From Macrostomum lignano (taxonomy: Eukaryota): a stretch of 64,000 nucleotides of DNA. The translations under genes were made by a program, and so were the position numbers. The stretch is taken from positions 186,001-250,000 of the forward strand of contig NIVC01001342.1 in the NCBI GenBank assembly GCA_002269645.1, given 5' to 3'. Of the stretch, positions 6,053-43,557 are shown piece by piece. The notes beneath the pieces were generated by a model that worked only from the letters and a program-made list of their open reading frames with translations, was not told the DNA's origin and searched no databases. Numbering within the stretch: the first letter of the stretch is position 1; each line of letters starts with the position of its first letter.

Positions 6053-9000
6053 TTAGAGTAAATAATTACGGCCTCCGGGAAGTGGGCGTTGGGATTCTCT
6101 TCCACGGCCACTGTCGCCAGCGCCTCCGCCTCGTGGGACGGAGTGACTCCCTCCACGGCCACTGTCGCCAGCGCCTCCGCCTCGTGGGACGGAGTGACTC
6201 CCTCCACGGCCACTGTCGCCAGCGCCTCCGACTCGTGGGACGGAGTGACTCCCTCCACGGCCACTGCCGCCAGCGCCTACGCTTTCTAGGATGGAGTGAC
6301 TCCCTCCACGGCCTCTGCCGCCAGCGCCTCCGCCTCGTTGGTCGAAGTGACTCCCTCCACGGCCTCTGCCGCCAGCGCCTCCGCCTCGTGGGACGGAGTG
6401 ACTCCCTCTGGCGCCAGCGCCTCTGCCTCGTGGGACGGAGTGACTCCCTCCACGGCCTCTGCCGCCAGCGCCTACGCTTTGTAGGATGGAGTGACTCCCT
6501 CCACGGCCTCTGCCGCCAGCGCCTCCGCCTCGTGGGACGGAGTGACTCCCTCTGGCGCCAGCGCCTCTGCCTCGTGGGACGGAGTGACTCCCTCCACGGC
6601 CTCTGCCGCCAGCGCCTACGCTTTGTAGGATGGAGTGACTCCCTCCACGGCCTCTGCCGCCAGCGCCTACGCTTTGTAGGATGGAGTGACTCCCTCCACG
6701 GCCTCTGCCGCCAGCGCCTCCGCCTCGTGGGACGGAGTGACTCCCTCTGGCGCCAGCGCCTCTGCCTCGTGGGACGGAGTGACTCCCTCCACGGCCTCTG
6801 CCGCCAGCGCCTACGCTTTGTAGGATGGAGTGACTCCCTCCACGGCCTCTGCCGCCAGCGCCTACGCTTTGTAGGATGGAGTGACTCCCTCCACGGCCTC
6901 TGCCGCCAGCGCCTACGCTTTGTAGGATGGAGTGACTCCCTCCACGGCCTCTGCCGCCAGCGCCTCCGCCTCGTTGGTCGAAGTGACTCCCTCCACGGCC
7001 TCTGCCGCCAGCGCCTCCGCCTCGTGGGACGGAGTGACTCCCTCTGGCGCCAGCGCCTCTGCCTCGTGGGACGGAGTGACTCCCTCCACGGCCTCTGCCG
7101 CCAGCGCCTACGCTTTGTAGGATGGAGTGACTCCCTCCACGGCCTCTGCCGCCAGCGCCTACGCTTTGTAGGATGGAGTGACTCCCTCCACGGCCTCTGC
7201 CGCCAGCGCCTACGCTTTGTAGGATGGAGTGACTCCCTCCACGGCCTCTGCCGCCAGCGCCTCCGCCTCGTGGGTCAAATTGACTTCCTCCACGGCCTCT
7301 GCCGCCAGCGCCTCCGCCTCGTGGGACGGAGTGACTCCCTCCACGGCCACTGCCGCCAGCGCCTACGCTTTCTAGGATGGAGTGACTCCCTCCACGGCCT
7401 CTGCCGCCAGCGCCTCCGCCTCGTTGGTCGAAGTGACTCCCTCCACGGCCTCTGCCGCCAGCGCCTCCGCCTCGTGGGTCAAAGTGACTCCCTCCACGGC
7501 CTCTGCCGCCAGCGCCTCCGCCTCGTGGGTCGAAGTGACTCCCTCCACGGCCTCTGCCGCCAGCGCCTCCGCCTCGTTGGTCGAAGTGACTCCCTCCACG
7601 GCCGCTGCCGCCAGCGCCTCCGCCTCGTGGGACGGAGTGACTCCCTCCACGGCCTCTGCCGCCAGCGCCTCCGCCTCGTGGGACGGAGTGACTCCCTCTG
7701 GCGCCAGCGCCTCCGCCTCGTGGGTCGAAGTGACTCCCTCCACGGCCTCTGCCGCCAGCGCCTACGCTTTGTAGGACGGAGTGACTCCCTCCACGGCCTC
7801 TGCCACCAGCGCCTCCGCCTCGTGGGTCAAAGTGACTTTCTCCACGGCCTCTGCCGCCAGCGCCTCCGCCTCGTGGGTCGAAGTGACTCCCTCCACGGCC
7901 TCTGCCGCCAGCGCCTCCGCCTCGTGGGTCAAAGTGACTCCCTCCACGGCCTCTGCCGCCAGCGCCTCCGCCTCGTTGGTCAAAGTGACTCCCTCCACGG
8001 CCTCTGCCGCCAGCGCCTCCGCCTCGTGGGTCGAAATGACTCCCTTCAAGGTCACTTTCGCCAGCGTCTTCGCCTCGTAGGATGGAGTGACTCCCTCCAC
8101 GGCGCCTGCGGCCAGCGCCTCCGCCTGGTGAGCCGTTGGGATTTCTTCCATCGCTATTCTCATTTTCCCGGTGCAGTACTAGGCGGGTCTCTTCAACGAA
8201 CTCGGTCGCTTTGTGCGCCAGTTCGTAGACACTCTTCGGAGCTTCAGTCGCAGTAAGCAATTCGTTCACGCTTCGCTCAAGTTCGTCAATATTAACTTGC
8301 AGCCTGTGCTTCTCCTCATTCACTGAACTGACCCATAGGATGATCCACGCTCCCTCTTCTGTTAGGATATTAAATTCTCTTCGTACAAAATAGTCGATTA
8401 ATTTCTGGTCCATATTGACGGTCGATTCAAAATTGTTTTCAAAATATTCTGTCACTTTTTCAATTGTGAGCTCGCTTGGATTTCGATTATAATGTTTTAA
8501 TTGGTCTCTTGGCTTAATAAAAGCACCAGTATCAGCATCTTGTCTTCTTTTGTAAGCGAAAGGAAAATATCGTGGAAGCCTAATTTTTTTAGCTGAATAA
8601 ATGAAATTTTTCCAAGCGTGGTCCAGGGCCCTGTGCGAGTTCTCCAGTGTCTGCTTGAGGAACTTCTTCTCTTGGTGGCGATCGGCTATGAGATGGTTCC
8701 GAGTGGCCGAGAGCAGTGCTTGACGTGGATACGGGTTCAGATCGAACTCCTCTTTCACCTTCTGGCAAATGTCCCGGAACTTAACTTCCGCTTCATTTAC
8801 TGCCTTTTCGTAGCTGTCCTGCATCGCTAGATCGAATTCCTCATCTGAACTCTGTAATTTTTTGTACAGCAACCTTTTCTTGATGAAGAAGGACGTTGAG
8901 CTTTTCCGCAGGTTCAGCAGCCGAGCAACCAGCTCATACTGATCCCTGTGGTGAAGTTTAGGATCGTTCCTCAGGCCCTGAAGAAACTTCAAAACTTGCT

Positions 9001-11578: not shown

Positions 11579-11764
11579 GTCGACAGTGACGATTCCGACT
11601 GCGTGCTGCGTTTTAGTCCAGCTCAGATTGAATCCGAGCTTCTCTGCTCTCCTGGGGCGGCTCGGGTGAGCGGCTGCTCAGAGTCCCTGCTGAGAGAAGA
11701 GTGCCGAGTGAGCAGCCAATTAGCGCTGAGCTGAGCTGAAAGAGCAAATGAGTTCTCACAGCAA

Positions 11765-11940
11765 GTGAATCTCCATATCACAGTGAGTGAATCTCCATAT
11801 CACAGTGAGTGAATCTCCATATCACAGTGAGTGAATCTCCATATCACAGTGAGTGAATCTCCGTATCACAGTGAGTGAATCTCCATATCACAGTGAGTGA
11901 ATCTCCATATCACAGTGAGTGAATCTCCGTATCACAGTGA
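11765..11940. repeat. 22-bp tandem repeat (~8 copies) just upstream of gene A
   Basis: (GTGAATCTCCATATCACAGTGA)n. Confidence 0.95.
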
Positions 11941-12574
11941 ATGAATAACCGGGTCATTCTCATCCCCTTTCTTTCCATTGGGGATTAAGCCAACCAGATC
12001 CCCTGATGAAACCTGGGTTCTCAACCAAACACTGCCAGAGTTGGCTGTTGCCAGCACACAACACTTACGCAGAAAATGCAGACGTAAAAGATTCTGTTCA
12101 GATTGAGGCGCAGCTGTCTGAGTCGGTCGCTCGCAAGCAGTGGGCTGGTCTGTCCAATCCTAGTTGATAAACAGAGTGAGTGAGTTAAATAGCGTCGCTT
12201 GACTGAGCAAATTTTCTCTCGCGCCAGAGACTCGGAGTTCCGGACAGAAAGATATACAGAGGGGAGACCCCTTGCGCGTACAACAGGCTTAGGAGAGGCC
12301 GTGAGTCTCTCATTGTTCTCGGGTAGCTGCGTTTTCTCTGCTGAGTGCGTGCATTGGCTGTGCCGAAGTTTCAGCTCGCTAAAAAACAATGGCACGGCTC
12401 GGCAGATGGAGAAAAACTCCGCGTTATAAGGCACTATAATTTGTGTTGCTGTCCTGATGACCAACTGCAACAGCTACCGTGAGAAACTCTTCATTCGGTG
12501 TCGAAATATAGGATAGGCCAACCAGACACTTCAAACCAGTCCCAATCTGCAGGTTAAGACCGGTGTAAATGTAG

Positions 12575-13670
<1,096 letters not shown>

Positions 13671-14920
13671 GACAGACACAAGTTGCTTCAGAATAGTGGA
13701 AGTGTGAAGTATATTTTACAGACAACTAAAATATTTTCAGAAAGATCAAAGCAAAGCTGTGGTGACTTTACCCAATAGAAAATGGTGGGAATCCATCTGT
13801 AGCAACAGGGGTTGCGGAGCTGCATAGGTTACGTCAGCGGGTGCAGGCTGACGTAACGCACTAAGCGGCAGAGGACAGAAGGCGCTGCCGCTCCCCGCAG
13901 CTTCATCACGGATAGAGAGGCCATGCGAATGTCCTAGATGGCCTTGTAGGTCATGGACAGGCACAGCTTCATCACGGATAGAGAGGCCAGGCTGTGTGGC
14001 CAAAAGCCAGCCGCTCCGCTACTGCAGCTGATCGGCAGTCGCCTGCCGCAGGCTGGAGCCTCCTGCAGAGGGAAAGAGTTGCAAAAACTGCTTTTTGATT
14101 GCGATTGAGGAGGCCTTTGAAGATTGCGGCTAGAAGTTGTTGAGTAGTCCTTACTGTCAGCTCCGTGAGGCAGTCTGCTTGCACCGCAAAATGCGAGAGA
14201 AATTCCATTAAAAACTCTGCCGCAGGCTCGCGGACCAGCTGCTGTGCTTTCATTTTAAAGCACTCACAGTTGTGTCTCAGCGCCTGCTTGGCTGCAGGCA
14301 CATGCTGTAGTAACTGGGATGGCCACCCAGGATAATTGAATGCAAGCTATTCTCAGTTAAGCTTAGTTAAACAACTTGCACGAATGCAACGAATCCAGTC
14401 CTTAGAGCAGGGGTCGGAAATTTTTAACCTCACGGGCCAGAGGAAGAATCCTGCTCACGGCTGACGACCAGATGAGAGGAATGGAGACGGAATAAAAGAT
14501 GAGAGATAGAGAGGAGAGAATTGGATGAGAGAAGATAAGAAATATATATATTAAGACGCAGAGGGGAGGCCCCTTGCGCGCACGCGCTCGCAGAACAGGC
14601 GGGAGGGGCAGGCAGCAGCAGCGCCTGCAGGTCAGCGATGAGGCAGTCCGCTAGAGTGGCAGTGCGGGCCTGGCCACGGCGCGATTGCTCGGTCGGCCGG
14701 GGCAGCATGGCGAGGGCCAGCGGGACGGGCCCTCTAGTAAGAAAAGATAAGATAAGAAGAGAAGGGCGACAAAGGAGGGAGGACAGTGGAGAGAAGAGGA
14801 GCGAGGGGAGAGGAGGAGAGAGGGGGAGAGAGCAGCCAGATTGCAATTGCGACGTTTCAAATGAGCCGATGGCCAAATAGAGAGGCCCGCGGGCCGGAGT
14901 TTGCCGACCCTTGTATTATA

Positions 14921-15540: not shown

Positions 15541-16309
15541 CAGACCTTGTGACCCTGAGCGGGCCGGATTGCTATTGTGAAGTTTCAAAAGGCCGGATAG
15601 AAAGACTTCGTGGGCCGCATCACAGCCCTGGTCTAATATATGAGATTTTTGACGCTACAACTCAAATAGGGGCTCCTTCCCTCATCACGGTTAAGTGAAC
15701 TATTTTATTTTTGGGGTGTTCCTAGTCTTCTAGACTTCTACTACTATGGCTCTGGAATGAGCTTCTGTTATCAGTGGGAGAGCCAAATAACCAAGGCTGG
15801 TGAATTCCACGAATATTTCCTGATGACGCAATCACGAGATGTTTGCTTTCAATCCGTTTACTTGATATGCGCAATCTCAGAGATGTTCACTGCCAGAGAG
15901 TATAAAGGGGTGTTCCAGGTAAGAGCTTCGATTAAGATTAATTAAAACTGGTTTCAGGATTCTCATGTTAGAGCGAACTGATATCTCGATCTGATGTATG
16001 GTGGGATCTGTTATCCTTTGTTAGGGTTGGATGGATCAGTTTGTTCTATCCAAGTGGTTAGCTGCATCTCATCACGGGATGCTGAATGAGTCAGTGGAAT
16101 CAGCATCAGACTCATGGGATATTGAATAACGCAATGGGGTCAGCATCACCATTACCACTGTGCCAGCATCAGTATTATATACGAGATCAAGAAATGTACT
16201 TCATGAGCACTAATTTTTTGCCATCTATAGAAATTCGGTTCAAAAAGCCCGCCATCTTCCTTCCGCTTATTTCCAAAATTCCCTTTTTTCCGGGACGAAG
16301 GTTTAGCAA

Positions 16310-16910
16310 TAAACAGTGGCACTGATGGGATAACAGAAGCAATAAACAGTTTCATGATGGGATAACAGAAGCAATAAACAGTTTCATGATGGGATAACAG
16401 AAGCAATAAACAGTGGCACTGATGGGATAACAGAAGCAATAAACAGTGGCACTGATGGGATAACAGAAGCAATAAACAGTGGCGCTGATGGGATAACAGA
16501 AGCAATAAACAGTGGCACTGATGGGATAACAGAAGCAATAAACAGTGGCACTGATGGGATAACAGAAGCAATAAACTGTGGCACTGATGGGATAACAGAA
16601 GCAATAAACAGTGGCACTGATGGGATAACAGAAGCAATAAACAGTGGCGCTGATGTGATAACAGAAGCAATAAACAGTTTCATGATGGGATAACAGAAGC
16701 AATAAACAGTTTCATGATGGGATAACAGAAGCAATAAACTGTGCCGCTAATGGGATAACAGAAGCAATAAACAGTTTCATGATGGGATAACAGAAGCAAT
16801 AAACAGTGGCACTGATGGGATGACAGAAGCAATAAACAGTGGCGCTGATGGGATAACAGAAGCAATAAACAATTTCATGATGGGATAACAGAAGCAATAA
16901 ACAGTGTCGC
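16310..16910. repeat. 33/32-bp minisatellite downstream of gene B (paralog 31240-31450)
   Basis: (AAACAGTGGCACTGATGGGATAACAGAAGCAAT)n with 32-bp TTTCATGATG variants. Confidence 0.95.
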
Positions 16911-16967
16911 TGTCAAGTATCTCTTGCTAAAGAGTGGCTTTTGTTCTTTTATAATCCGAGACTGTTC

Positions 16968-19670
16968 TTAATTCCATCGGTAAAAATTTGGCACGACTAC
17001 GTCACCAGGTTCCATCAGCGATTCTTTGAAGTTTTCGTTGTTTTTTCCAGGCTCCAGGCCGAGCTGCCGCCAGGCAGCCATCATGACGACGAACCAGCAG
17101 GCGGCCACCTCCATGTGGCTTTTCCAGCACCAGTACCAGTCGCTGTGCATCACGTCGCACTCCTTGCTGACCAGCGAGGCCTCCATGCGGCCGCGGACGA
17201 TGGCGGCTGACTGGCGGAAAAGGCAGTGGTACCAGTCAAGAGTGGCATCGTTACCATCGATACTGATATTTATATTCGTGTCTTTGACCCAATGCGCCAG
17301 CTCAATGAGTGCATTCTTGTACTCTGGATCTGAGAAATTCTCAATGAGGAATTTGGACAAATTATTTTCTCCGGCAACCCTGAAGAGCTCGTACACGCTG
17401 CAGTGCTCAAGCGTTGGAATGTTTCTTTGAATTACCGGTACTTGTCTCGCGTGATACTTTCGGTTGAGACGCTGGCACACCGCCTCTCTGTTGTTCCGGA
17501 GACCTTCGCTTTCTCGTAGTCTGCAGTATTCAATGGCGCTTCGCGCGGGGGTTTCCTGCGGATTCTGCGGATTCAGCGGAATCGCTCCCTCATCTGCGAG
17601 GGCGTCTCCCCAGATGTCGTGATATTTATTAGTTCCGCTGGTCCTATTAGTGTTAGCGTTGTAAGACCCGTCTAAATTTATAATAGGCACCAGACACTGA
17701 GCGTATGTATCCTTGACGTTATCAAAGGTAACCTCTGGCTGATGAGGTAAATGCACTATCAGCGTGCGGTGCATCAGCGTGAGTATGTTGTCTCGCAGGA
17801 TCCGGCAAGTATCTGTCACAGGCAGTGAAATGCACACCCAGCATACTCCATCAAATGTGCACTGGAGGTCAAAGGTGTCGTGGTCTACTTGATCTGCAAT
17901 TTCGCGACGGAGTGTTGGCTTGAAAGTATTCCCATATTTAATCAGTCCGTTCTCGTTGAACAGCGCGAGTTGAAGGGTCAGAGCCTCAGGGTTGCCAACT
18001 TGGCCTTCCGCCTCAATCTGTGGCGGAAGCTTCCAAGTATTGTAGGGGCACTCCACCATCTTGAGAGTGACTTTTTTCACCCACGTTGAAAATCTCTCAC
18101 CGCTCATAATGCAATCCATTTCGTTGTCGGCCAGTTGGTCGAGGTTTCCCAGCGTGACGCAGTTGCCCAGGATGACAAGTTTTTCACTCGGCTTGGTCTT
18201 GTACTCCACTCGAATTTGAATGTTCACAGTCTTTTGCTTATCTGCAGAAGATACACGAACTCCTCTGTCACCCCAGTTGGTTTCCAGAGTGAACTGAGGC
18301 TTTCCGCCGTTTGCATTGAGTCGCACACTTCTAATGACATCGCAGCTTCTTTCATTGTTGGGTCTCAAGCGGTTTCTGTGGTCGTCGAACACAGCGAGAC
18401 CAAATGATAGATTGTCACCATTCGGAAGAGTTAGACGGCCATCAGGATGTTTCCGCATTAAGACATTGAGTTGTTGCTTCTCCCAAATGCTGTTGCGTTT
18501 GTACGTCATCAAATTTTTTCGGTCAGCTCGAACGTTTTTCCCGACAACAGCAATCATCTCACCAAAACTTGTGCTATAGTGAGTTCTTACAGCGATCTCG
18601 GCGTTTACAAATAGTTTTATATTCTGGTCATCGAAAGCGGATTCTATAGTAACACGATTCCCATCGTCCACGGTGAGCTGCACAGAACGTTGAGGAACAT
18701 TTTCTGGTTGCCACTGATCCTCGACATATTGGTAGAATCCGAATGCAAGATCAACTACATTCTTGGCTTGATCCAAAACAGACACTTGGTTGTTAGTGGA
18801 GTGAATTAACATAGTTATTTTTACATATTTCTGTCCAATACGCGTATTTCTATTAACTGTCAATTCCTGTTCCGTAGCAATCTCACGGCAGTTTCCCTTC
18901 ACAGCGATTCGTTCAACATCTTGAGGAATGGAGTTCGTTTGAAAAGTGACGTCACGTGTTGTGAACAAGTACAGAACATAGTTGTTAGGATTGACATCCA
19001 GGAGATAGGATTTTATACCCTTCCAAGTGAGAGTGACAGGTTGCCGGAAATCCTCAAAATTCCACTCTTCATTGTCATCAATGCGAGAACCAATGCTGAA
19101 TTTAAGATTGGTTTCTTCAACAGCAGAGGGCTCCGAACTATAAAGGGGTACTTTCCAATCTCCAGCTCTATTTTGAAACATTTCAATGCTGACTGCTTCT
19201 GTAGTCTGATGCTGGTCAAACCTCTCAAATGTCAGCTCAGCGCAGTTTCCCCGGACAGCAATCTGCTGATTATTTGCGGGAGCACGATATAGGAAGGTGA
19301 CTTTCACTGTCTCTGTTGGGAATACGCGATAGCCTGAGCCATCTGGGCTGAACCAAATCAGAAACCTGTTCTGTCTTGTCGCTTTTAAAACCACGCTGAG
19401 TGGCTGATCATGCTGCAGGTTCCAATCATCATTAGGTCCAGCGCGAACAAGTATTCTCACTGACAGATCTTGTCCGGAAACTTTGAGGCTTCCAGCATCA
19501 TCTCTCACCATTTTGATCTTGAGTTCTGTCTGCCAGACATTGTTTCCCAAGTCAGTAGCCAGTCGCTTGACATTCCGAAGCTCATTACAGTTTCCTTGAA
19601 CTCCAATTTGCGTTTCATCTGCTGCATTGAATTCAGTCCGGAAGACAACAGTAACATTAACTGTTGTCAT
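16968..19670 (-). CDS. Gene B: intronless 900-aa protein with five tandem CBM20-like domains and an unrecognised ~280-aa C-terminal domain
   Basis: ORF from ATG 19670. Five ~115-aa units begin with a VxVT/IxV strand then GNC/VVG-xxL (e.g. AVRTHYSTSFGEMIAVVG; IRVEYKTKPSEKLVILGNCVTLGN), matching the CBM20 N-terminal pattern. Confidence 0.85.
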   Translation of the reverse strand: MTTVNVTVVFRTEFNAADETQIGVQGNCNELRNVKRLATDLGNNVWQTELKIKMVRDDAGSLKVSGQDLSVRILVRAGPNDDWNLQHDQPLSVVLKATRQNRFLIWFSPDGSGYRVFPTETVKVTFLYRAPANNQQIAVRGNCAELTFERFDQHQTTEAVSIEMFQNRAGDWKVPLYSSEPSAVEETNLKFSIGSRIDDNEEWNFEDFRQPVTLTWKGIKSYLLDVNPNNYVLYLFTTRDVTFQTNSIPQDVERIAVKGNCREIATEQELTVNRNTRIGQKYVKITMLIHSTNNQVSVLDQAKNVVDLAFGFYQYVEDQWQPENVPQRSVQLTVDDGNRVTIESAFDDQNIKLFVNAEIAVRTHYSTSFGEMIAVVGKNVRADRKNLMTYKRNSIWEKQQLNVLMRKHPDGRLTLPNGDNLSFGLAVFDDHRNRLRPNNERSCDVIRSVRLNANGGKPQFTLETNWGDRGVRVSSADKQKTVNIQIRVEYKTKPSEKLVILGNCVTLGNLDQLADNEMDCIMSGERFSTWVKKVTLKMVECPYNTWKLPPQIEAEGQVGNPEALTLQLALFNENGLIKYGNTFKPTLRREIADQVDHDTFDLQCTFDGVCWVCISLPVTDTCRILRDNILTLMHRTLIVHLPHQPEVTFDNVKDTYAQCLVPIINLDGSYNANTNRTSGTNKYHDIWGDALADEGAIPLNPQNPQETPARSAIEYCRLRESEGLRNNREAVCQRLNRKYHARQVPVIQRNIPTLEHCSVYELFRVAGENNLSKFLIENFSDPEYKNALIELAHWVKDTNINISIDGNDATLDWYHCLFRQSAAIVRGRMEASLVSKECDVMHSDWYWCWKSHMEVAACWFVVMMAAWRQLGLEPGKNNENFKESLMEPGDVVVPNFYRWN

Positions 19671-20589
19671 GGTAGCTGGTAGCCTCAGACGGCAGAATTC
19701 TACGCCTCGAGAAGATTTCAGGACAGCGAAGATCCTGTCCTGATTGAGAGGCTCCGCTCTTCTTCAAAATCGGCTCGAGTGAGCAGCAGCCAAGCAGAAT
19801 GGCCAAGTCAGCCTAGCCCGTTGCAGCTTTCTAACTGACAGATGGTGCCTCGGAGCTTTGCAGGTTTCCTGTTGGGGGGGGGGGTAATTGTGGAGTCTGC
19901 CTCTAGAGGCAAACGGATCCGCAATAAAATACTTTCGCGCCAGTGAATGTCGCGGTCGTGGCTTACAGTTCAGGAGTAGAAGTGTTTTATGACTCTTTAT
20001 GGAGACTCAGAACCTGCTGGAATGGAGAGCTCAGCATTGAGCAGCTTGCCGCTAATTCCTTAGTTAAGTAAGCTGAGCTCGTATTTAGAGAGTTCCCCCT
20101 GTGCGCCGCTAGGGAAGTCGATAATCTGGGGTGGAGGGCATTAAACTGCTGAGCTGCCGCAATCGATAAGGCAAAATTAAGTTTGAGTTCACCCTTTCAG
20201 TCTTTTGTCAGCTAGCTTTTATAGTCTTTAGTGGGTCTCACTCTCTGTCTCTCTTTACCACTGTCTCACTCTCTCACACTGTCTCACTCTCTACCACTGT
20301 CTCACTCTCTACCACTGTTTCACTCTCTCACACTGTCTCACTCTCTACCACTGTCTCACTCTCTCACACTGTCTCACTCTCTACCACTGTCTCACTCTCT
20401 CTCAGAATTTATAATTTTCCTGGGTTAACTGCGCTCCTGTGCGTTTTACTGTGTGGAGAGCCGACACCAGATGGGGCAGGTGCGACCGGAATGTAATGAA
20501 CTCTTCGCTGCGAGGGGCTCACAAAGACCGAATAAATAGAGACTTGGACAGTGATCTGGACAAATTTTGTTAGGTTAGCATGATTATAA

Positions 20590-21077
<488 letters not shown>

Positions 21078-21584
21078 CCTCGTCTCCATTCAGCAAGTGG
21101 AGTTAAAAATCCAAATCTAGCAATATAATTTACAACTAGACAGCGCTGATTGAGGGCCATCAATCATATTGGAAATGAAAGATTTTTCCGGGCTGCAGTT
21201 CTTCAGAGATCTTTCCTACTGATGCAGCGCGTCGTTGCCGTTCCCAGCCTCAGCCGCAGTGGCTGCAATTTCTGGTTACGCCAAAGGTTTGCGCAATCCA
21301 CGCATCTGCGCGTGCGACCCGCGCCTTGCCTGTACCAACTGCGTTCTCGAGAGCTTGGGATGCAGTGTGAAATGTAAAGTCATGGTTTCCGTGCACAACT
21401 TTCCCCTTGCTTAATTGTCAACATGGCGTGCTTTACGGTAGTAAGTACTACTAATAGCAAACTGCCGGTAGCAATCGCCTAGCAACCCAAATAGGCTTGC
21501 TGCCTGCAGCGCCTGGGGCCCCAAAAATGCTGGCAGATTTTTGTGTCAAGAGAGAGCGATATTTTGTGACAGAAAATGCCGTGT

Positions 21585-22290
21585 GTTGTGTCAGAGTATG
21601 CCATACTTGTGTCAGAGGGTGCCATACTTGTGTCAGAGAGTGCCATATTTTGTGCCAGAGGGTGCCATATTTCGTGTCAGAGGGTGCCATATTTGTGTCA
21701 GAGGGTGCCATACTTGCGTCAGAGGGTGCCATACTTGTGTCAGAGGGTGCCATACTTGTGTCAGAGGGTGCCATACTTGTGTCAGAGTATGCCATACTTG
21801 TGTCAGAGGGTGCCATACTTGTGTCAGAGTATGCCATACTTGTGTCAGAGGGTGCCATACTTGTGTCAGAGAGTGCCATATTTTGTGCCAGAGGGTGCCA
21901 TATTTCGTGTCAGAGGGTGCCATATTTGTGTCAGAGGGTGCCATACTTGCGTCAGAGGGTGCCATACTTGTGTCAGAGGGTGCCATACTTGTGTCAGAGG
22001 GTGCCATACTTGTGTCAGAGTATGCCATACTTGTGTCAGAGGTGCCATACTTGTGTCAGAGTATGCCATACTTGTGTCAGAGGGTGCCATACTTGTGTCA
22101 GAGAGTGCCATATTTTGTGCCAGAGGGTGCCATATTTCGTGTCAGAGGGTGCCATATTTGTGTCAGAGGGTGCCATACTTGTGTCAGAGGGTGCCATACT
22201 TGTGTCAGAGGGTGCCATACTTGTGTCAGAGGGTGCCATACTTGTGTCAGAGGGTGCCATACTTGTGTCAGAGGGTGCCATACTTGTGTA
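21585..22290. repeat. 21-bp minisatellite
   Basis: (GTCAGAGGGTGCCATACTTGT)n with 22-bp variants. Confidence 0.95.
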
Positions 22291-22397
22291 GTAGTCGTCT
22301 TTGAAGTCAGCTTTGGCTGGACAATTAAACTAAAGGAATTAAGGCAGCATAAGCCTGTCCGGCCAGAAAGCCAGGTGTGGAGCGAGCGAAGGCTATG

Positions 22398-23501
22398 TGG
22401 AGCGAGCGGAGCCGTGCTTCCAATGGTGCTCCGCGCGTACAACGTGCCTGAGCAGCTGATCTCCGCCGTCATGGCGATGTACCGTGATACGACAGCTGCT
22501 GTGACAACACCGGACGGCCTATCGGACTCCTTTGAGACATCCTCCGGAGTGCTTCAGGGAGATACGCTGGCGCCGTTTCTGTTCGTCCTGGTGCTTGACT
22601 GGGTGCTGCGGACTGCTCTTCCTACCGACGACGACGGTTTTCTGCTGCAGCGACGCGTGGGTCGACGTCAACCGGAGAAGCGGCTCAGCGTGCTTGGCTA
22701 CGCCGACGACCTCGCCCTGCTGTCCTCGACCGTCGAGGGCGCCCAACGGCAGCTGGACAGGCTGGTTGCCGTTGCGGCGAGTGTCGGCCTGGTGGTCAAC
22801 ACGCAGAAGACCGTTGTGCTCTGCGTGCCGGACGACATCGAGGCTGCAATATTTTGCCGAGGCGCTGACGGGCAGGCGACCGAACTCCCGCGATGTCAGC
22901 AGTTCGTCTACCTCGGCGGTCTGGTTCCAGACGCTCGCGAGGACCTGCGACGCCGCCGCGGGCTTGCCTGGGCTGCCTTTCGTTCTGTGAGGGCAGTCCT
23001 GCAGTCCGAGGCCCTACCGGACCGCCAGAGGGCGGCGCTGTTCCAGGCGGTAATCGAGACCGTCCTGCTGTACAACGCCGAGACCTGGACGCTGACGGAC
23101 TCACTCGAACAGCAAGTCGATGCGGCGCACGCTGGTCTGCTGCGCGCCGCCTTCAACATCGGCGTCGAGCGAGTCACCAACGCGGCACTCTATCGCCGCG
23201 CTGGCCTGCCACGTCCAAGTGATCTACTGCGCCGTCGGCGACTCCAGCTCGCAGGCCATCTCATCCGCGCCGAGTCGTACTGCCCACAGCCGGTGCAGGA
23301 GGTGCTGCTGCTCACGCTGCAGGCACCCTACCGGCGAGGTCAAGCGCGAACTCGGCGTTATGTCGACTGTCTGCTGGCTGACGCCGGCGCCCCGGACACT
23401 GCCGGTGGCGCGGCCTTTGTTCGCGCCCAAGCCATGAAGCGCGCCCTGTGACGCTGACTTTTACCATCATGACAGCGTATTTTGTTGTTGTTGTTGTTGT
23501 T
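22398..23501 (+). mobile_element. 5'-truncated non-LTR retrotransposon (RTE-like LINE), RT C-terminal half, (TTG)n tail, 10-bp TSD
   Basis: SGVLQGDTLAPFLFVLVLDW..GYADDLALL RT motifs, stop at 23451, TTG tail 23481-23501. GAAGGCTATG is duplicated at 22388-22397 and 23502-23511. Confidence 0.92.
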
Positions 23502-23764: not shown

Positions 23765-24110
23765 TTCCGTGTGCCTGCGTTGCTGCAAAAGCATTTGTCA
23801 GGGATTCCCAGCGCGAAACAATGGCTTGGCATTCCTACTATTAGTAGTAGGATGTCTGGGATGTGCCTGCGTTGCTGCAAAAGCATTTGTCAGGGATTCC
23901 CAGCGCGAAACAATGGCTTGGCATTCCTACTATTAGTAGTAGGATGTCTGGGATGTGCCTGCGTTGCTGCAAAAGCATTTGTCAGGGATTCCCAGCGCGA
24001 AACAATGGCTTGGCATTCCTACTATTAGTAGTAGGATGTCTGGGATGTGCCTGCGTTGCTGCAAAAGCATTTGTCAGGGATTCCCAGCGCGAAACAATGG
24101 CTTGGCATCA
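23765..24110. repeat. 92-bp tandem repeat (~3.7 copies)
   Basis: Identical units starting at 23771, 23863, 23955 and 24047. Confidence 0.95.
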
Positions 24111-24838: not shown

Positions 24839-25654
24839 TCACAATTCTTTCACGGAGTTGCTGATGGCGTTTCTCGCTGCTTTGTGCACCGAAGTCTCTC
24901 CGTTGAGGCCTTTCAGCATGAAGACGAGCGACCCGAGCTGCTCCTTGATGAACTGCATGGAGTCTTCGCCTTGCTCAAGTGCAGCCAGGTGGATAGGAGT
25001 GCTGCCCTGATCATCTTTCTCCATCAGACAGTCTGAGCCGCACTCGCTGACCAGCCACTTGAGGGCCGAGTTGCTGCTTTCATTTGCAGCGGCACAATGA
25101 ATAGCAGTTCGGCCTACAGATCCTTTCTGAAAGAAGCAGTCGGGTCCGAAAAGCGACTTGAAGAACTGCATGGAGTCTGAGCCCTGACAGCCCGCTGTCA
25201 TGTGCACGGGTGAGTCACCATTCGAATCGACTGCACTCAGAAAACCGGGTCCTTTCTTTCTGGCAATCCACTTCAGAATTGATTTGCTGCGCTTGTTTGC
25301 AGCCGCGAAGAACGCAATAGAACTGTTGCACCTGCCTTTCAGCTCGAAGCATTCCGCTCCTATGCGGCTGTGGATGAACTTCATGGAGTTCTCGCCTTGA
25401 AAAATAGCAACCCAATGCAGTGGCGCGTCGCCATACTGGTCTCTGGCTTGAGTCAGACAGGAGGGGCCGAGCCTCTCAACCAGCACCTTCAGACAGTCGA
25501 GTCCGTAAGGCTTCCAAGCAAGATGATGAGCCAAAGATTCCTCAAACTGCTCAGTCTTTACCGTCAGGTTGCTGCCGACCCGCCTGCACAGGCGCAGCAG
25601 CTGCTCGCGGTCGTCGGCATCCAGAGCAGCGCTCAGTTGCTCAGCTGTGGCCAT
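24839..25654 (-). CDS. Ankyrin-repeat protein, truncated paralog (271 aa from ATG 25654)
   Basis: ~6.5 ankyrin repeats (GDAPLHWVA, GDSPVHMTA, GRTAIHCAA, GSTPIHLAA), collinear with 42003-43373 but ending at NSVKEL*. Confidence 0.8.
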   Translation of the reverse strand: MATAEQLSAALDADDREQLLRLCRRVGSNLTVKTEQFEESLAHHLAWKPYGLDCLKVLVERLGPSCLTQARDQYGDAPLHWVAIFQGENSMKFIHSRIGAECFELKGRCNSSIAFFAAANKRSKSILKWIARKKGPGFLSAVDSNGDSPVHMTAGCQGSDSMQFFKSLFGPDCFFQKGSVGRTAIHCAAANESSNSALKWLVSECGSDCLMEKDDQGSTPIHLAALEQGEDSMQFIKEQLGSLVFMLKGLNGETSVHKAARNAISNSVKEL

Positions 25655-26105
25655 CGCCTGGGCGGATGAAAATCTTTGTCCGAAAAAGTTGCTTCTGGCT
25701 GTCCCTGTTAGCGTCCGAGAGCCGGTGCTGGCATGCAGTGCCGCACAGCTTATTCCAGCTTGGAACCCAGCCGAAGTGAAACTACTTGAGCTCGACTGAC
25801 GCTGCTTGACCAACTGCTCAGTTCTGAATGCGCAGAGCTATTTAATCTCTTTTTTGATGCAAGAATTCTCTGTACACTGGCGTTCTGCATCTCTATTGAG
25901 TGCTCAATAAGGCACAAAGAGAGTACTTTAGACTCATATGAGTGTGCAAAACCTATGAGGGAGGAAAATTCTGTTTTGATTTTATCATTGTTGTCGCGTA
26001 GCTGAGTCTTCTCTGCTGAGTGCGCGCACTGGCTGTGCCGAAGTTTCAGCTTGATAATAAACAATGGCACGGCTCGGCACATGGAGAAAAACTGCAACGG
26101 CTACG

Positions 26106-30699: not shown

Positions 30700-30930
30700 G
30701 ATATCGAATAACATATGGGATTTGTTATATCCAAATGGTTGGCTACTTTCTCATCATATGATATTGAATAACACAATGGGATCAGCATCATGGGATATTG
30801 AATAACACAATGGGATCAGCATCATGGGATATTGAATAACACAATGGGATCAGCATCATGGGATATTGAATAACACAATGGGATCAGCATCATGGGATAT
30901 TGAATAACACATTGGGATCAGCATCAGGGG
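30700..30930. repeat. 34-bp minisatellite (also 31680-31815)
   Basis: (CATGGGATATTGAATAACACAATGGGATCAGCAT)n. Confidence 0.9.
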
Positions 30931-31506: not shown

Positions 31507-31675
31507 TTAATTCCATCGGTAAAAATTTGGCACGACTACGTCACCAGGTTCCATCAGCGATTCTTTGAAGTTTTCGTTGTTTTTTCCAGGCTCCAGGCCG
31601 AGCTGCCGCCAGGCAGCCATCATGACGACGAACCAGCAGGCGGTCACCTCCATGTGTCTCTTCCAGTTCCAGTAC
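31507..31675 (-). pseudogene. Orphan copy of the last ~55 codons of gene B lying downstream of gene C
   Basis: Near-identical to 16968-17130 (..AAWRQLGLEPGKNNENFKESLMEPGDVVVPNFYRWN*), including the B 3' flank. Confidence 0.85.
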
Positions 31676-31861: not shown

Positions 31862-33811
31862 TTATTCTTGCCATCGGTAGAAGTTCGGTACGAAAGGCTC
31901 AGTATTTTCCTCGTATTCCTTCAGCTTATTTTTAAAATTCTCATTGCTTTCTCCAAGCCGCCGCCAGGCAGCCATCATGACGACGAACCAGCAGGCGGCC
32001 ACCTCCATGTGGCTTTTCCAGCACCAGTACCAGTCGCTGTGCATCACGTCGCACTCCTTGCTGACCAGCGAGGCCTCCATGCGGCCGCGGACGATGGCGG
32101 CTGACTGGCGGAAAAGGCAGTGGTACCAGTCAAGAGTGGCATCGTTACCATCGATACTGATATTTATATTCGTGTCTTTGACCCAATGCGCCAGCTCAAT
32201 GAGTGCATTCTTGTACTCTGGATCTGAGGAATTCTCAATGAGGAATTTGGACAAATTATTTTCTCCGGCAACCCTGAAGAGCTCGTACACGCTGCAGTGC
32301 TCAAGCACTGGAATGTTTCTTTGAATTACCGGTGATTGTCTCGCGTGATACTTTCGGCTGAGACGCTGGACCACCGCTTCTCTGTTATTCTGGAGATGTC
32401 TGCTTTTTCGCAGTTCGCAGTATTCAATGGCGCTTCGTATTGCTGGGACGTTCTGATTCTGCGGAATCGCTTCCTCATCTGCGAGAGCGTCTCCCCAGAT
32501 ATCGTGATATTTATTAGTTCCGCTGGTCTTTGTCGTCTTTTTGTCGTAAGACCCGGCTGACGTAATTATGGGAACCAGACACTGAGCGTATGTATCCTTC
32601 ACTTTATCAAAGGTAACCTGAGGCAAATGCACTATCAGCGTGCGGTGCATCAGCGTGAGTATGTTGTCTCGCAGGATCCGGCAAGTATCTGTGACAGGCA
32701 GTGAAATGCACACCCAGCATACTCCATCAAATGTGCACTGCATGTCAAAAGTGTCGAGTTCTACTTGATCTGCAATTTCGCGCCGGAGTGTTGGCTTGAA
32801 AGTATTCGTCCCATATTTAATCAGTCGGTTCTCGTTGAACAGCGCGAGTCTAAGGGTCAGAGCCTCATCTCCGTCTCCCGCACCTATCTGTGGCGGAAGC
32901 TTCCAAGTATTGTCGCAGCACTCCACCATCTTAAGAGTGACTGTCCTCGCCCACGTGGAAAAGCTCTCGCCGCTCATAATGCAATTCATTTCGTTGTCGG
33001 CCAGTTGGTCGAGGTTTCCCAGCTTGACGCAGTTGCCCAGGATGACAAGTTTTTCACTCGGCTTGGTCTTGTACTTCACTCGAATGTGAATTTTCACAGG
33101 CTTTTGCTCATCTGCAGAAAATAAGCGAACTTTGCTGTCACCCCAGTTGGTTTCCAGAGTGAACCGAGGCTTTCCGCCGTTTGCATTGAGTGGCACACTT
33201 CTAAGGACATCACAGCTTCTTTCATTGTTGGGTCTCAAGCGGTTTCTGTGGTCGTCGAACACAGCGAGACCAAATGACAGATTGACACCATTCGGAAGAG
33301 TTAGACGGCCATCAGGATGTTTCCACATTAAGACATTGAGTTGTTGCTTCTCCCAAATGCTGTTGCGTTTGTACTTCATCAAGTTTTTTTTGTCAGCTCG
33401 AACGTTTTCGTTGCCAAGCTCATCGCAGCTCCCGACAACAGCAACCTTCTCACCAAAACTTGTGCTATAGTGAGTTCTTACAGCGATCTCGGCGTTTACA
33501 AATAGTTTTATATTCTGGTCATCGAAAGCGGATTCTATAGTAACACGATTCCCATCGTCCACGGTGAGCTGCACAGAACGTTGAGGAACATTTTCTGGTT
33601 GCCACTGATCCCCGACATACTGGTAGAATCTGAATGCAAGATCATCTCTCACCATGTTGATCGTGAGTTCTGTCTGCCAGACATTGTTTCCCAAGTTGGC
33701 CAGTGGCCTGACATTCCGAAGCTCATTACAGTTTCCTTTAATTCCGATTTGCGCTCCATCTGCTGCATAGAATTTAGTCCGGAAGAGAACAGTAACATTA
33801 AACTCCGCCAT
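31862..33811 (-). CDS. Gene C: intronless 649-aa paralog of gene B with three CBM20-like domains and the same C-terminal domain
   Basis: ATG at 33811 (MAEFNVTVLFRT). Collinear with B except for a 747-bp in-frame deletion. Canonical-looking CBM20 start AVRTHYSTSFGEKVAVVGSCDELGN. Confidence 0.87.
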   Translation of the reverse strand: MAEFNVTVLFRTKFYAADGAQIGIKGNCNELRNVRPLANLGNNVWQTELTINMVRDDLAFRFYQYVGDQWQPENVPQRSVQLTVDDGNRVTIESAFDDQNIKLFVNAEIAVRTHYSTSFGEKVAVVGSCDELGNENVRADKKNLMKYKRNSIWEKQQLNVLMWKHPDGRLTLPNGVNLSFGLAVFDDHRNRLRPNNERSCDVLRSVPLNANGGKPRFTLETNWGDSKVRLFSADEQKPVKIHIRVKYKTKPSEKLVILGNCVKLGNLDQLADNEMNCIMSGESFSTWARTVTLKMVECCDNTWKLPPQIGAGDGDEALTLRLALFNENRLIKYGTNTFKPTLRREIADQVELDTFDMQCTFDGVCWVCISLPVTDTCRILRDNILTLMHRTLIVHLPQVTFDKVKDTYAQCLVPIITSAGSYDKKTTKTSGTNKYHDIWGDALADEEAIPQNQNVPAIRSAIEYCELRKSRHLQNNREAVVQRLSRKYHARQSPVIQRNIPVLEHCSVYELFRVAGENNLSKFLIENSSDPEYKNALIELAHWVKDTNINISIDGNDATLDWYHCLFRQSAAIVRGRMEASLVSKECDVMHSDWYWCWKSHMEVAACWFVVMMAAWRRLGESNENFKNKLKEYEENTEPFVPNFYRWQE

Positions 33812-34156
33812 GGTACTGGTAGCTGGTAGCCTCACGGCAGAATTCGAGGCCTCGAGAAGACTTCAGGACAGCGCAGATCCAGTCCTGATTGAGAGGCTCC
33901 GCTGATCTTCTTCAAAATCGGCTCGAGTGAGCAGTTGCCAAGCAGAATGGCCAAGTCAGCTCTGTGCTGCGAGAGCAGTGCGGGAAAGGCGGGCTTAGTC
34001 AGGGTTGGAGCGAGAAAGAGTTGCAGCGAATTCAATTCGGAGTGCCAGACAGAAGACTATATAAATACATGTAGTTTGGATTAGTCTAGGTATTAGGACG
34101 CAGAGGGGAGACCCGCTCGCAGAACAGGCGGGGGGGGGCAGCAGCCTGATGGGCCA

Positions 34157-42002: not shown

Positions 42003-43373
42003 TCACCTGTCTATTGCCAGGCAGTAGCCAGCCGGGTCACCTGTCTTTGCCAGGCTGTAGCCAGCCATCTCAGCAGCCGTTCGGCCATTTGAGTCGGGCA
42101 GGACCAGACACTGCGGCCCAACCTCGCTGAGGAGCCAGTCCATCAGCTGCTTCTTCTTGCTGTTCGCAGCGGCATAGTGAGCCACCGTCTGACCGCTACG
42201 ATTCGTCAGACCGAAGGCGGCGACGCCCAGCGTCTCCTTGATGAGCCTCAGCGAGTCCACGTCCTGATGCCGAGCTGCCAGGTGCAGCGCCAGGCTGCCG
42301 TCGGTGTCCCTCAGCTGCAGGCAGTCGGGTCCCAGCTGGCCGACAATCCACCGCAGTGCGGAGCTGCTTCTGCAGTTGATGGCTGCGAAATGGGCCGCAG
42401 TTCTCTGCTTGTCAGATGCCAACGTGAGGCATTTCGGTCCGAGCGAGCTCACCGCCAGCTGCATCGACTTCTCGTCCTGATGCTGAGCTGCCTGGTGAAC
42501 CGGCGTTTCGCCAAACGCATTTTTGGCCAGCAGACACTCCGCTCCCAGCTCCTTGACGCACCAGTCAAAGGCGGAGTTGCTGATGACGTTTCTCGCTGCG
42601 CAGTGCACCGAAGTATCTTCGCTGAGGCCTTTCAGCATGAAGACGTCAGGACCAAGCTGCTCCTTGATGAACTGCATCGAGTCGGAGCCCTGTCTGAATG
42701 CGGCCAGGTGAACGGGAGTGCAGCCCTGCTTATCCGTCTCCATCAGAGAGTCTGAGCCGCACTCGCTGACCAGCCACCTGAAGGCTGAGTTGCTGCTCAA
42801 ATTCATGGCTGCCTCGTGAACGACTGTGCGGCCAAATTCGCACCGCTGCTTGAAGCAGCCGGACCCGAGCTGCTCTTTGATGAACTGCAACGAGTCGCAG
42901 CCCTGAATCATGGCTGACAGGTGAGCAGGCGTGCTGCCACCAGAAGCTTCCACCCTGAGACAGGCTGGTCCAGCCTTCTGAACCAGCCACTTCAGAGCCG
43001 AGTTGCTGTGCGGGTTCAGCGCCGCCGTGTGCACGATGGTTCTGCCGTGGTATCCCCTCAGCTTGAGGCACGCAGGTCCCAAGCAGCTGTAGATGAACTC
43101 CATGGAAGCCGCACTCTGGTACTGAGCTGCCAGGTGCACAGCGAGAAATCCATGTTCATCCCTTGATTTTGACAGGCAGGCAGTTCCGAACTTCCTAACC
43201 AGCAGCTTGAGACAGTCGAGTCCGTACGGCTTTCTAGCGACTTGGTGAACCACCGGGCCTTCGTAACTGGCTGTCCTCACCGTCAGGTTGCTGTCCAGCT
43301 GCCTGCACAGCTGCAGCAGCCGGTCGCAGTCGTCAGCATCCAGGGCAGCTCGCAGCTGGTCAGCAGTGGCCAT
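42003..43373 (-). CDS. Intronless ankyrin-repeat protein (456 aa from ATG 43373), ~11.5 repeats
   Basis: Alternating 36/35-aa repeats (G.T.VH.AA.N..S.SAL.W.V...G..CL / G.TP.HLAA..Q..DS.QFIKEQLG). Confidence 0.88.
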   Translation of the reverse strand: MATADQLRAALDADDCDRLLQLCRQLDSNLTVRTASYEGPVVHQVARKPYGLDCLKLLVRKFGTACLSKSRDEHGFLAVHLAAQYQSAASMEFIYSCLGPACLKLRGYHGRTIVHTAALNPHSNSALKWLVQKAGPACLRVEASGGSTPAHLSAMIQGCDSLQFIKEQLGSGCFKQRCEFGRTVVHEAAMNLSSNSAFRWLVSECGSDSLMETDKQGCTPVHLAAFRQGSDSMQFIKEQLGPDVFMLKGLSEDTSVHCAARNVISNSAFDWCVKELGAECLLAKNAFGETPVHQAAQHQDEKSMQLAVSSLGPKCLTLASDKQRTAAHFAAINCRSSSALRWIVGQLGPDCLQLRDTDGSLALHLAARHQDVDSLRLIKETLGVAAFGLTNRSGQTVAHYAAANSKKKQLMDWLLSEVGPQCLVLPDSNGRTAAEMAGYSLAKTGDPAGYCLAIDR

Positions 43374-43557
43374 TGCATGGGTCAGGGGTGAGAGGGCCTT
43401 TGCTGCTGAGCCAGACAAAGTCACCAATATGGCAGCAGAGTGCCGCAGAACCAATCGGGTTGGCCCATAGACACCAAGGAAGTGCGCGACCGTGAGATGC
43501 GCGCTCTTTGTTGGCGAGCAAGTCTGCAGAATATCTGCTAGAGTCTGTAGCAGATTC

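What the first reader, a model, noticed from the sequence alone, without database searches (positions are those of the whole stretch)
16968..17820. Unrecognised, strongly conserved C-terminal domain of genes B and C
Seen: a ~280-aa mostly helical region that I cannot assign, with catalytic-looking residues conserved in both paralogs (TSGTNKYHDIWGDALAD; RLxRKYHAR, an R-x5-H pattern; WYHCLFRQ; ECDVMHSDWYWCWKSHME). The DNA at ~17066-17440 vs ~31960-32335 is almost identical, while the CBM arrays and extreme C-termini have diverged, implying purifying selection or gene conversion focused on this domain. Inference: an enzymatic effector (nuclease, metal-dependent hydrolase or toxin), possibly a new family.
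Basis: partly seen in the sequence, partly recalled or inferred. Interest (0 to 1): 0.72.

Follow-up and report, generated by a model that had tools for sequence, protein, structure and literature searches.

The report
Orphan helical domain on flatworm CBM20-array proteins
The two genes are tandem copies of a flatworm (Macrostomum lignano) gene that joins starch/glycogen-binding-type modules to a helical tail domain with no known relatives; their near-identity is recent gene conversion, and nothing supports an enzyme or toxin.

Summary
Window 16968-17820 (-) encodes the about 285-aa, mostly helical C-terminal domain of a 900-aa ORF (gene B), and gene C (31862-33835, -) carries a paralogous copy. 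The window is Macrostomum lignano contig NIVC01001342.1.

The domain matches nothing in Pfam, in PDB sequences, or by Foldseek against PDB and BFVD. It defines a very small family: 8 M. lignano proteins (counting the window's own gene C) plus 3 environmental sequences.

The interpretation mostly fails:
- The almost-identical stretch (17066-17412 vs 31960-32306) has 1 difference in 347 bp and dS about 0.016, against about 0.17 next to it. This is a recent gene-conversion patch inside a segmental duplication whose non-coding flanks are also 88-96% identical.
- Similar identical patches lie in the CBM part. Overall the CBM part is not more diverged than the tail.
- Of the "catalytic-looking" motifs, only R-G-R-x-E and a downstream H...W-F are kept family-wide. 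HDIWGD, WYHCLFRQ and ECDVMHSDWY are clade-specific.
- The domain occurs two or three times in tandem in some members. No member has a signal peptide.

The most likely role is a non-catalytic assembly or anchoring module for cytosolic CBM20-type arrays. This role is inferred, not shown.

The parts
16968..19670 (-). Gene B: intact single-exon ORF of 900 aa, with five ~118-aa CBM20-like beta-sandwich modules (aa 1-~600) followed by the C-terminal helical domain
   Evidence: Pfam CBM_20 scores 19.2 bits, below the cut-off of 23.3. This exact product is not on record in the gene collection.
16971..17828 (-). C-terminal helical domain of gene B (aa ~615-900), the region of the finding
   Evidence: The family profile matches it at 365 bits. 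The AF2 model is all-alpha with helices at 28-50, 59-69, 122-160, 192-207, 218-244 and 253-279 of the aa 591-900 excerpt. No Pfam, PDB or Foldseek match.
17061..17213 (-). Family-wide conserved core (B aa 820-870): SAAIVRGRMEASLVS...HMEVAACWFVVMMAAW. The invariant residues are R, G, R, E and W; A, I, V, H and F are near-invariant.
   Evidence: Alignment A2. GC3 is 0.90-0.93 here against 0.3-0.6 in the rest of the gene.
17066..17412 (-). Gene-conversion tract in B, with 1 difference in 347 bp to gene C
   Evidence: dS is 0.016 for aa 761-870.
31960..32306 (-). Partner of the conversion tract in gene C
31862..33835 (-). Gene C: ORF of 657 aa from GTG. The annotated product starts at the ATG at 33811 (649 aa, single exon). 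It has three CBM20-like modules, lacking ~249 aa relative to B in frame, plus the helical domain.
   Evidence: Pfam CBM_20 scores 37.8 bits, above the cut-off.
31865..32704 (-). C-terminal helical domain of gene C
   Evidence: The family profile matches it at 355 bits.
31510..31675 (-). Orphan relic of a B-type 3' end (WNWKRHMEVTACWFVVMMAAWRQLGLEPGKNNENFKESLMEPGDVVVPNFYRWN*), lying downstream of gene C's own stop codon
   Evidence: The family profile matches it at 65.6 bits. It is 95.8% identical to B 16715-17136.
16305..16906 (.). 33-bp tandem array (18 copies) just downstream of gene B. The same array lies at 31240-31451 downstream of the relic in locus C.
24839..25813 (-). Ankyrin-repeat gene copy 2, part of the duplicated unit upstream of B
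42003..43454 (-). Ankyrin-repeat gene copy 1, upstream of C. It is 98% identical to the gene upstream of P0001 in the homeologous locus L001.

Best explanation
SHOWN. Genes B and C are tandem paralogs in the Macrostomum lignano genome. Each encodes a cytosolic protein made of an N-terminal array of CBM20-derived beta-sandwich modules and a ~285-aa all-helical C-terminal domain. That domain belongs to a very small, undescribed family: 8 M. lignano proteins (counting the window's own gene C) plus 3 sequences from unidentified eukaryotes.

The simplest member is one canonical CBM20 followed by this domain, so the CBM20 + helical-tail fusion is the family's basic plan. Only the last two helices are strongly constrained (A-x-I-V-R-G-R-x-E, then H-x6-W-F).

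The almost-identical B/C stretch is a recent gene-conversion patch laid over this constrained core. The core of the B/C/P0001 clade is a conversion hot spot: GC3 is 0.9 there, and synonymous divergence drops from saturated to 0.38 even against the very distant paralog P0001.

INFERRED. The domain is most likely a non-catalytic helical bundle. It would act as the assembly, partner-binding or membrane-proximal anchoring end of a glycan (glycogen)-binding array, working like an STBD1-type tether and not like an enzyme or secreted toxin.
For: Organism and family:
- Gene C equals an annotated 649-aa product on GCA_002269645.1 contig NIVC01001342.1.
- An exhaustive profile search of 1.84 billion representatives found only 11 proteins, 8 of them from M. 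lignano.

Architecture:
- CBM_20 passes the Pfam cut-off in C (37.8 bits), in P0004 (24.0 bits) and in spliced P0009 (35.8 bits, covering 4-89 of 97 profile positions).

No known domain:
- Pfam, PDB by sequence and by profile, and Foldseek against PDB (best E 2.0, TMq <= 0.25) and BFVD (best E 0.7) all found nothing.
- The model queried was of usable quality (pTM 0.77).

Conversion:
- 1 difference in 347 bp, P about 1e-11.
- 1 synonymous difference observed against ~11 expected, P = 2e-4.
- Non-coding flanks are 87-96% identical.
- Identical patches also lie in the CBM part.
- GC3 is 0.90-0.93 in the core of B, C and P0001 only.
- B vs P0001 dS is above 2.5 upstream and 0.38 in the core.

Against catalysis and in favour of a scaffold:
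- Only R236, G237, R238, E240 and W269 are invariant.
- The domain occurs three times in P0003 and twice in P0007, and every copy keeps RGRxE...WF while losing the other polar residues.
- The N-terminal two thirds tolerate 60-80-aa deletions.

Cytosolic and anchoring:
- No member has an N-terminal signal peptide.
- P0010 ends in a strong transmembrane tail (Kyte-Doolittle 2.47), P0007 in a marginal one, and P0003 in a Cys-cluster plus polybasic tail.

Precedent:
- Lophotrochozoan STBD1-type proteins carry one to several N-terminal CBM20 domains and act as glycogen receptors (PMC12913940).
Against: - No experiment or homology links the helical domain to any function, so the tether role rests on architecture alone.
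- B and C themselves have no transmembrane or lipidation signal.
- The CBM20-like modules of B and C are degenerate. B is below the Pfam cut-off, and the Trp of the usual L-G-x-W site-1 motif is replaced (read, judged from my own knowledge of CBM20). Glycan binding is therefore unproven.
- A conserved polar set on three helices (Y149/H150, R236/R238/E240, H262) would also fit a small active site or a metal or phosphate site.
- Pairwise omega for B vs C is 0.3-1.1. One copy may be drifting.
- No expression evidence was obtained.
Confidence: 0.5

Rival explanations
1. The domain is a new all-alpha enzyme aimed at glycogen or another glycan by the CBM20 array. This is the laforin and GPCPD1 logic (CBM20 plus a catalytic domain). 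R-G-R-x-E, H262 and Y149/H150 would form a phosphate- or metal-binding active site.
For: - Polar residues are conserved on three separate helices.
- In the Macrostomum clade HD(I)WGE and Y-H-x-R-E are well kept.
- In animals CBM20 is otherwise often fused to catalytic domains, as in laforin and GPCPD1 (PMC12913940).
- The fold has no PDB match, so a new catalytic fold cannot be excluded.
Against: - There is no match to any enzyme family by sequence or fold.
- The HD doublet is absent in P0009, P0010 and P0007b and is HN in P0003a and P0003b. H150 is lost in 4 of 13 copies and H262 in P0007b.
- Tandem repetition and large indels inside the domain are unusual for a catalytic scaffold.
Confidence: 0.22
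2. The domain is a membrane-active helical bundle. A buried hydrophobic helix (VAACWFVVMMAAW) would be shielded by amphipathic helices, as in Bcl-2-like or colicin-type proteins, and the domain would insert into or bind organelle membranes.
For: - The most conserved helix is strongly hydrophobic (KD 1.2-1.55 over 19 aa in several members).
- Some members add a C-terminal tail anchor (P0010, P0007) or a Cys/polybasic tail (P0003) directly after the domain.
Against: - Foldseek gives no significant match to Bcl-2, colicin or any pore-former fold (BAK/MCL-1 at E 7, TMq 0.11).
- Hydrophobicity in B and C is below the usual transmembrane threshold.
- A hydrophobic core helix is normal in any soluble helical bundle.
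Confidence: 0.1
3. There is no biological function at this locus. B and/or C are decaying copies, and the apparent conservation is entirely a product of duplication and conversion.
For: - Omega for B vs C is 0.7-1.2 in several segments.
- C has lost ~249 aa and its original 3' end.
- B is not on record as a called gene.
- No expression data were obtained.
Against: - Both ORFs are intact over 900 and 657 codons.
- The internal loss in C is in frame.
- The core is conserved across paralogs with saturated dS, and in three sequences from other organisms. The family is therefore under selection even if one copy here is not.
Confidence: 0.12

Closest known systems
Lophotrochozoan STBD1-type proteins (STBD1 alpha/gamma/delta: one, two or many N-terminal CBM20 domains; glycophagy receptor) - PMC12913940
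   Same: - Cytosolic and non-secreted.
- CBM20 module(s) sit at the N-terminus, sometimes multiplied.
- No recognised catalytic domain.
- Lineage-specific expansions in lophotrochozoans. Vertebrate STBD1 adds a hydrophobic membrane anchor, as P0010 and P0007 do at the C-terminus.
   Different: - Oyster STBD1 is short, and its non-CBM part is described only by Atg8-interacting motifs. No 285-aa helical domain is described for it.
- The exhaustive profile search with the helical domain returned no annotated protein outside M. lignano: every named hit is M. lignano, and the other four are unnamed.
- The CBM20-like modules here are degenerate.
Laforin and GPCPD1 (CBM20 fused to a catalytic domain: dual-specificity phosphatase, or glycerophosphodiester phosphodiesterase)
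   Same: An N-terminal CBM20 is followed by a larger C-terminal domain that gives the protein its function.
   Different: The C-terminal domain here has no similarity to DSP or GP-PDE domains or to any Pfam family, and its predicted fold is all-helical.
Generic four- to seven-helix bundles (bacterioferritin, pectin-methylesterase inhibitor, MukF N-terminal domain), the best Foldseek rows
   Same: They are up-and-down helical bundles.
   Different: All matches are non-significant (E >= 2, TM normalised to the query <= 0.25). No di-iron ExxH motifs are present.

Membership tests
CBM20 starch-binding domain (PF00686) - N-terminal modules | Score at or above the Pfam gathering cut-off (23.3 bits) | tested here: met
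   Gene C scores 37.8 bits, P0004 24.0 bits and spliced P0009 35.8 bits over 4-89 of 97 profile positions. Gene B alone scores 19.2 bits, below the cut-off, but its modules are 82-90% identical to those of C.
CBM20 starch-binding domain (PF00686) - N-terminal modules | Aromatic glucan-binding residues, such as the Trp of the L-G-x-W motif of binding site 1 (from established knowledge of CBM20) | tested here: inconclusive
   Read, the window modules have GNCNELRN, GSCDELGNE, GNCVTLGNL and GNCPELGNN, with no Trp after G-N. P0009 keeps V-G-F-W-D. No residue-level alignment to the HMM was produced, and binding was not assayed.
STBD1-type glycogen receptor | CBM20 plus an Atg8-interacting motif that binds GABARAP/LC3 (PMC12913940) | not testable with these tools
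   [W/Y/F]-x-x-[L/I/V] motifs are too degenerate to score. No interaction data exist.
STBD1-type glycogen receptor | Hydrophobic membrane anchor (vertebrate form) | tested here: not met
   B and C have no 19-aa window above KD 1.21. Only P0010 (2.47), and marginally P0007 (1.58), have a tail anchor.
Any curated protein family (Pfam-A), including nucleases, metallohydrolases and toxin domains | Significant HMM match of the C-terminal domain | tested here: not met
   Across the 14 domain copies, no family is hit by more than one copy and the best E-value is 0.005. Full-length proteins match nothing but CBM_20.
Any solved structure | Sequence or fold similarity to a PDB chain | tested here: not met
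   phmmer best E 0.86. The profile search gave 0 hits at E <= 10. Foldseek gave 0 hits at E <= 0.001 and a best of 2.0. BFVD best E is 0.71. AlphaFold DB was not available.
HD-domain metal-dependent phosphohydrolases (considered because of the 'HD' doublet in an all-helical domain) | H...HD...D metal ligands conserved in all members | tested here: not met
   The HD doublet is missing in P0009 and P0010 (L-D and I-D), is H-N in P0003a and P0003b, and is absent in P0007b. It lies in a low-confidence loop (pLDDT 55-65). There is no Pfam HD match.

The most novel reading that the evidence does not exclude
The helical tail is a previously unseen catalytic or ligand-binding fold, with its site built from R-G-R-x-E, H262 and Y149/H150. 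CBM20 arrays would deliver it to glycogen or another glycan in flatworms, making it a third kind of animal CBM20-guided enzyme beside laforin and GPCPD1. Its 3' core would double as a recombination handle, through which tandem and homeologous family members exchange or lose gene bodies.
Probability: 0.15. Interest if true: 0.6.

Novelty: new variant of a known kind. Interest (0 to 1): 0.3.

Why it matters
If the domain proves functional, it would add a new partner domain to the short list of animal CBM20 architectures (GPCPD1, laforin, STBD1). It would also give a handle on glycogen handling in a regenerating flatworm model.

The locus is in addition a clean small example of how conversion patches in a neopolyploid, repeat-rich genome can look like domain-focused purifying selection. 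That matters for anyone who reads paralog identity as evidence of function.

As it stands, this is an orphan domain in hypothetical proteins of one genus, with no evidence of enzymatic or toxic activity.

Tried and rejected
- Single-sequence AF2 was useless (pLDDT 33.5).
- The word-indexed protein search returned little: only P0001 with the domain of B, only P0001 and P0010 with the 14-row alignment, and nothing new with the three distant members.
- PDB by sequence and by profile gave nothing.
- Foldseek against PDB and BFVD gave only non-significant helical bundles.
- Pfam on every domain copy and on the full-length members gave nothing beyond CBM_20.
- JGI metagenome and IMG/VR scans with A[AR]IVRGRxE found no true relatives among 167 and 28 pattern matches.
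- hhalign of the family against the helical part of neighbouring gene A showed no relation.
- Six-frame profile search of the window found no further copies beyond B, C and the relic.
- Literature searches for the M. lignano gene ids, for CBM20 in Macrostomum and for the SRA run of P0009 returned nothing.
- P0010's contig could not be retrieved, so the organisms behind P0009-P0011 remain unknown.
- The Bcl-2/colicin-like and HD-domain readings were considered and rejected for lack of fold or motif support.
- A secreted toxin or effector was rejected because no member has a signal peptide.
Full report
**1. What is at the coordinates**

BLASTP aligns B and C at 77% identity over 671 columns. The N-terminal parts are arrays of ~118-aa beta-sandwich modules of CBM20 type. 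Pfam CBM_20 scores 37.8 bits in C, above the 23.3-bit cut-off, and 19.2 bits in B.

**2. Organism and family**

The only close relative found by the indexed search is a Macrostomum lignano hypothetical protein, P0001 (45% identity). Gene C's 649-aa product is itself on record as a single-exon gene on M. lignano assembly GCA_002269645.1, contig NIVC01001342.1. The window is therefore flatworm nuclear DNA. The 900-aa product of gene B is not on record.

An exhaustive HMMER profile search of 1.84 billion representative proteins found only 11 proteins at E <= 0.001:
- eight from M. lignano, including gene C;
- one MetaClust sequence, apparently chimeric, whose matching part resembles P0004;
- three unnamed environmental sequences, P0009-P0011.

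No annotated protein from any other animal, including other flatworms, was returned.

P0009 comes from Logan run SRR23264968. It carries an 84-nt in-frame GT...AG intron. Once spliced, it is a full canonical CBM20 (35.8 bits, profile positions 4-89 of 97) followed directly by the helical domain. CBM20 plus this tail is therefore the family's minimal and probably ancestral plan.

P0003 carries the tail domain three times and P0007 twice. Most family genes are single exons.

**3. Is the domain assignable?**

No, by any test available:
- Pfam gives nothing on the 14 domain copies or on the full-length members apart from CBM_20.
- PDB gives nothing by sequence (best E 0.86) or by profile (no hit at E <= 10).
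- AF2 with the 14-row alignment gives a usable model: pLDDT 68.4, pTM 0.77, about seven long helices. Foldseek finds nothing significant for it in PDB (best E 2.0, TM to query <= 0.25) or in BFVD (best E 0.71).

More distant relatives may therefore exist.

**4. What is conserved**

In the family alignment, numbered on the aa 591-900 excerpt of B:
- Invariant: R236, G237, R238, E240 and W269 only.
- At least 90% conserved: P72, G78, A232, I234, V235, H262 and F270.

The constrained core is thus A-x-I-V-R-G-R-x-E on one helix and H-x6-W-F on the next.

- HDIWGD: H-D is kept in the Macrostomum clade. It is H-N in P0003a and P0003b, absent in P0007b, and L-D or I-D in P0009 and P0010.
- R-L-x-x-K-Y-H-x-R: the Y is kept in 12 of 13 copies and the H in 9 of 13.
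- WYHCLFRQ: not conserved.
- ECDVMHSDWYWCWKSHME: only the final H is conserved.

The first two thirds of the domain tolerate 60-80-aa deletions in P0003a and P0003b.

**5. Why B and C are almost identical at 17066-17412**

The duplicated unit is not confined to the domain. Non-coding sequence downstream (16715-17136 vs 31252-31675, 95.8%) and upstream (19497-19812 vs 33641-33960, 88.6%) also matches, and so do the satellite arrays. Each copy is preceded by an ankyrin-repeat gene.

Along the aligned 1.7 kb, differences are strongly clumped:
- 17066-17412 has 1 difference in 347 bp;
- 18557-18720, in the CBM part, has none in 164 bp;
- neighbouring 60-bp windows fall to 60-80% identity.

At the mean substitution rate of 0.079, a 347-bp stretch with at most 1 difference has P = 1.4e-11, or about 2e-8 after allowing for all window positions.

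Nei-Gojobori estimates:

| B residues | dS | dN |
|---|---|---|
| 761-870 | 0.016 | 0.008 |
| 591-700 | 0.22 | 0.076 |
| 701-760 | 0.15 | 0.16 |
| 481-590 | 0.15 | 0.10 |

From the adjacent synonymous rate, about 11 synonymous differences are expected in the tract, and 1 is seen (P = 1.8e-4).

Taken whole, the tail (90.5% nt identity) is not better conserved between B and C than the shared CBM part (93.1%).

**6. The core is a conversion hot spot in this clade**

GC3 jumps to 0.90-0.93 in the core codons of B (811-870), C (571-630) and P0001 (451-480). It is 0.3-0.6 elsewhere in the same genes. In distant paralogs the core reaches only 0.50-0.68.

Between B and P0001, synonymous divergence is saturated (pS 0.72-0.89) over aa 591-815 but only 0.38 over aa 816-870. 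Both patterns fit recurrent GC-biased gene conversion acting on a segment that is also under protein-level constraint.

**7. The homeologous locus**

L001, the contig carrying P0001, is a homeolog of the window:
- window 35352-41350 matches it at 98.3%;
- the ankyrin gene matches at 98.1%;
- the 5' end of gene A matches at 97.8%.

This agrees with the ~2.2% SNP rate reported between the three paralogous subgenome copies in this assembly (PMC10733133; hidden tetraploidy, PMC5704211).

Between those flanks the window has about 18 kb holding C, ankyrin-2 and B. L001 has only P0001 there. P0001's body shows no nucleotide match to B or C except in the last ~250 bp, at 85-90%.

Orphan B-type 3' ends lie just downstream of the stop codons of both C (31510-31675) and P0001 (L001 from 11640). 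Their breakpoints differ.

The simplest reading is inference only: an ancestral tandem array of at least three paralogs was pruned differently in the subgenomes, by deletions or unequal exchanges ending in or near the conserved 3' core. Ectopic replacement is the alternative.

**8. Function**

None of the proteins has a signal peptide. B and C have no transmembrane segment. P0010 ends in a strong tail anchor, P0007 in a marginal one, and P0003 in a Cys-cluster plus polybasic tail.

Five observations are considered together:
- invariant residues are few;
- the domain is repeated in tandem;
- the domain tolerates internal deletions;
- it shows no similarity to any enzyme;
- its partner is a CBM20 array, a type known from lophotrochozoan STBD1-like glycogen receptors (PMC12913940).

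On this basis I judge a non-catalytic assembly or anchoring bundle the most likely role. This is an inference at roughly 0.45-0.5 confidence.

A small conserved polar set on three helices keeps a new enzyme possible (about 0.2). A secreted toxin or effector is not supported.

**9. Verdict**

The feature is real and unassigned, and probably a new domain family of narrow distribution. The striking B/C identity is conversion. The catalytic-residue argument mostly dissolves at family level.

Noticed in passing
L001 1-21590 vs window 10466-43703: The contig carrying P0001 is a homeolog of the window, with flanks 94-98% identical. Where the window has ~18 kb (C, ankyrin-2, B), it has a single, very divergent family member (45% aa identity). 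Nucleotide similarity to B and C survives only in the last ~250 bp of the gene.
   Followed up: partly
window 31510-31675 (-); L001 11640-11760: Orphan relics of a B-type 3' coding end lie just downstream of the stop codons of gene C and of P0001. Their breakpoints differ, so two independent rearrangements ended in or near the conserved 3' core.
   Followed up: partly
window 17061-17240, 31955-32125; L001 ~11350-11440: GC3 spikes to 0.90-0.93 in the conserved core codons of B, C and P0001, against 0.3-0.6 in the rest of each gene. Distant paralogs do not show this.
   Followed up: yes
window 6053-11578 (-): Gene A is a 1841-aa ORF. It has one CBM20-like module of the same type as in B and C at its N-terminus, then a long helical region (weak TPR hit), then about 45 copies of a 17-aa GGGAGGRGRGGSHFDPR-type RGG repeat (about 6056-8330, GC 68%). 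Its helical part is unrelated to the B/C tail by hhalign.
   Followed up: partly
window 33640-33660 / 18750-19500: Gene C lacks ~249 aa (about two CBM20-like modules) relative to B. The loss is in frame and joins module 1 to the second half of module 3, as expected from unequal exchange between repeats.
   Followed up: partly
window 16305-16906, 31240-31451; L001 ~11760-14200: A 33-bp satellite lies directly downstream of the genes. It has 18 copies after B, 6 after the relic in locus C, and roughly 70 or more copies in the homeolog. A 34-bp satellite is at 30752-30939 and 31675-31818.
   Followed up: no
window 21541-23451 (+): A reverse-transcriptase fragment (RVT_1, E 5.6e-11) lies between gene B and ankyrin copy 2, preceded by a 21-bp x 33 tandem array (21586-22289).
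   Followed up: no
window 23770-24108: A perfect (100% identical) 92-bp tandem repeat of 3.7 copies.
   Followed up: no
window 16968-19670 (-): The intact 900-aa ORF of gene B is not on record as a called product in the gene collection, whereas its neighbour C is annotated. B may be unannotated or modelled differently in the public annotation.
   Followed up: partly
L003 239-322: The environmental family member P0009 contains an in-frame 84-nt GT...AG intron inside its CBM20. The intron had been read through by the gene caller. Removing it raises the CBM_20 score from 22.1 to 35.8 bits.
   Followed up: yes
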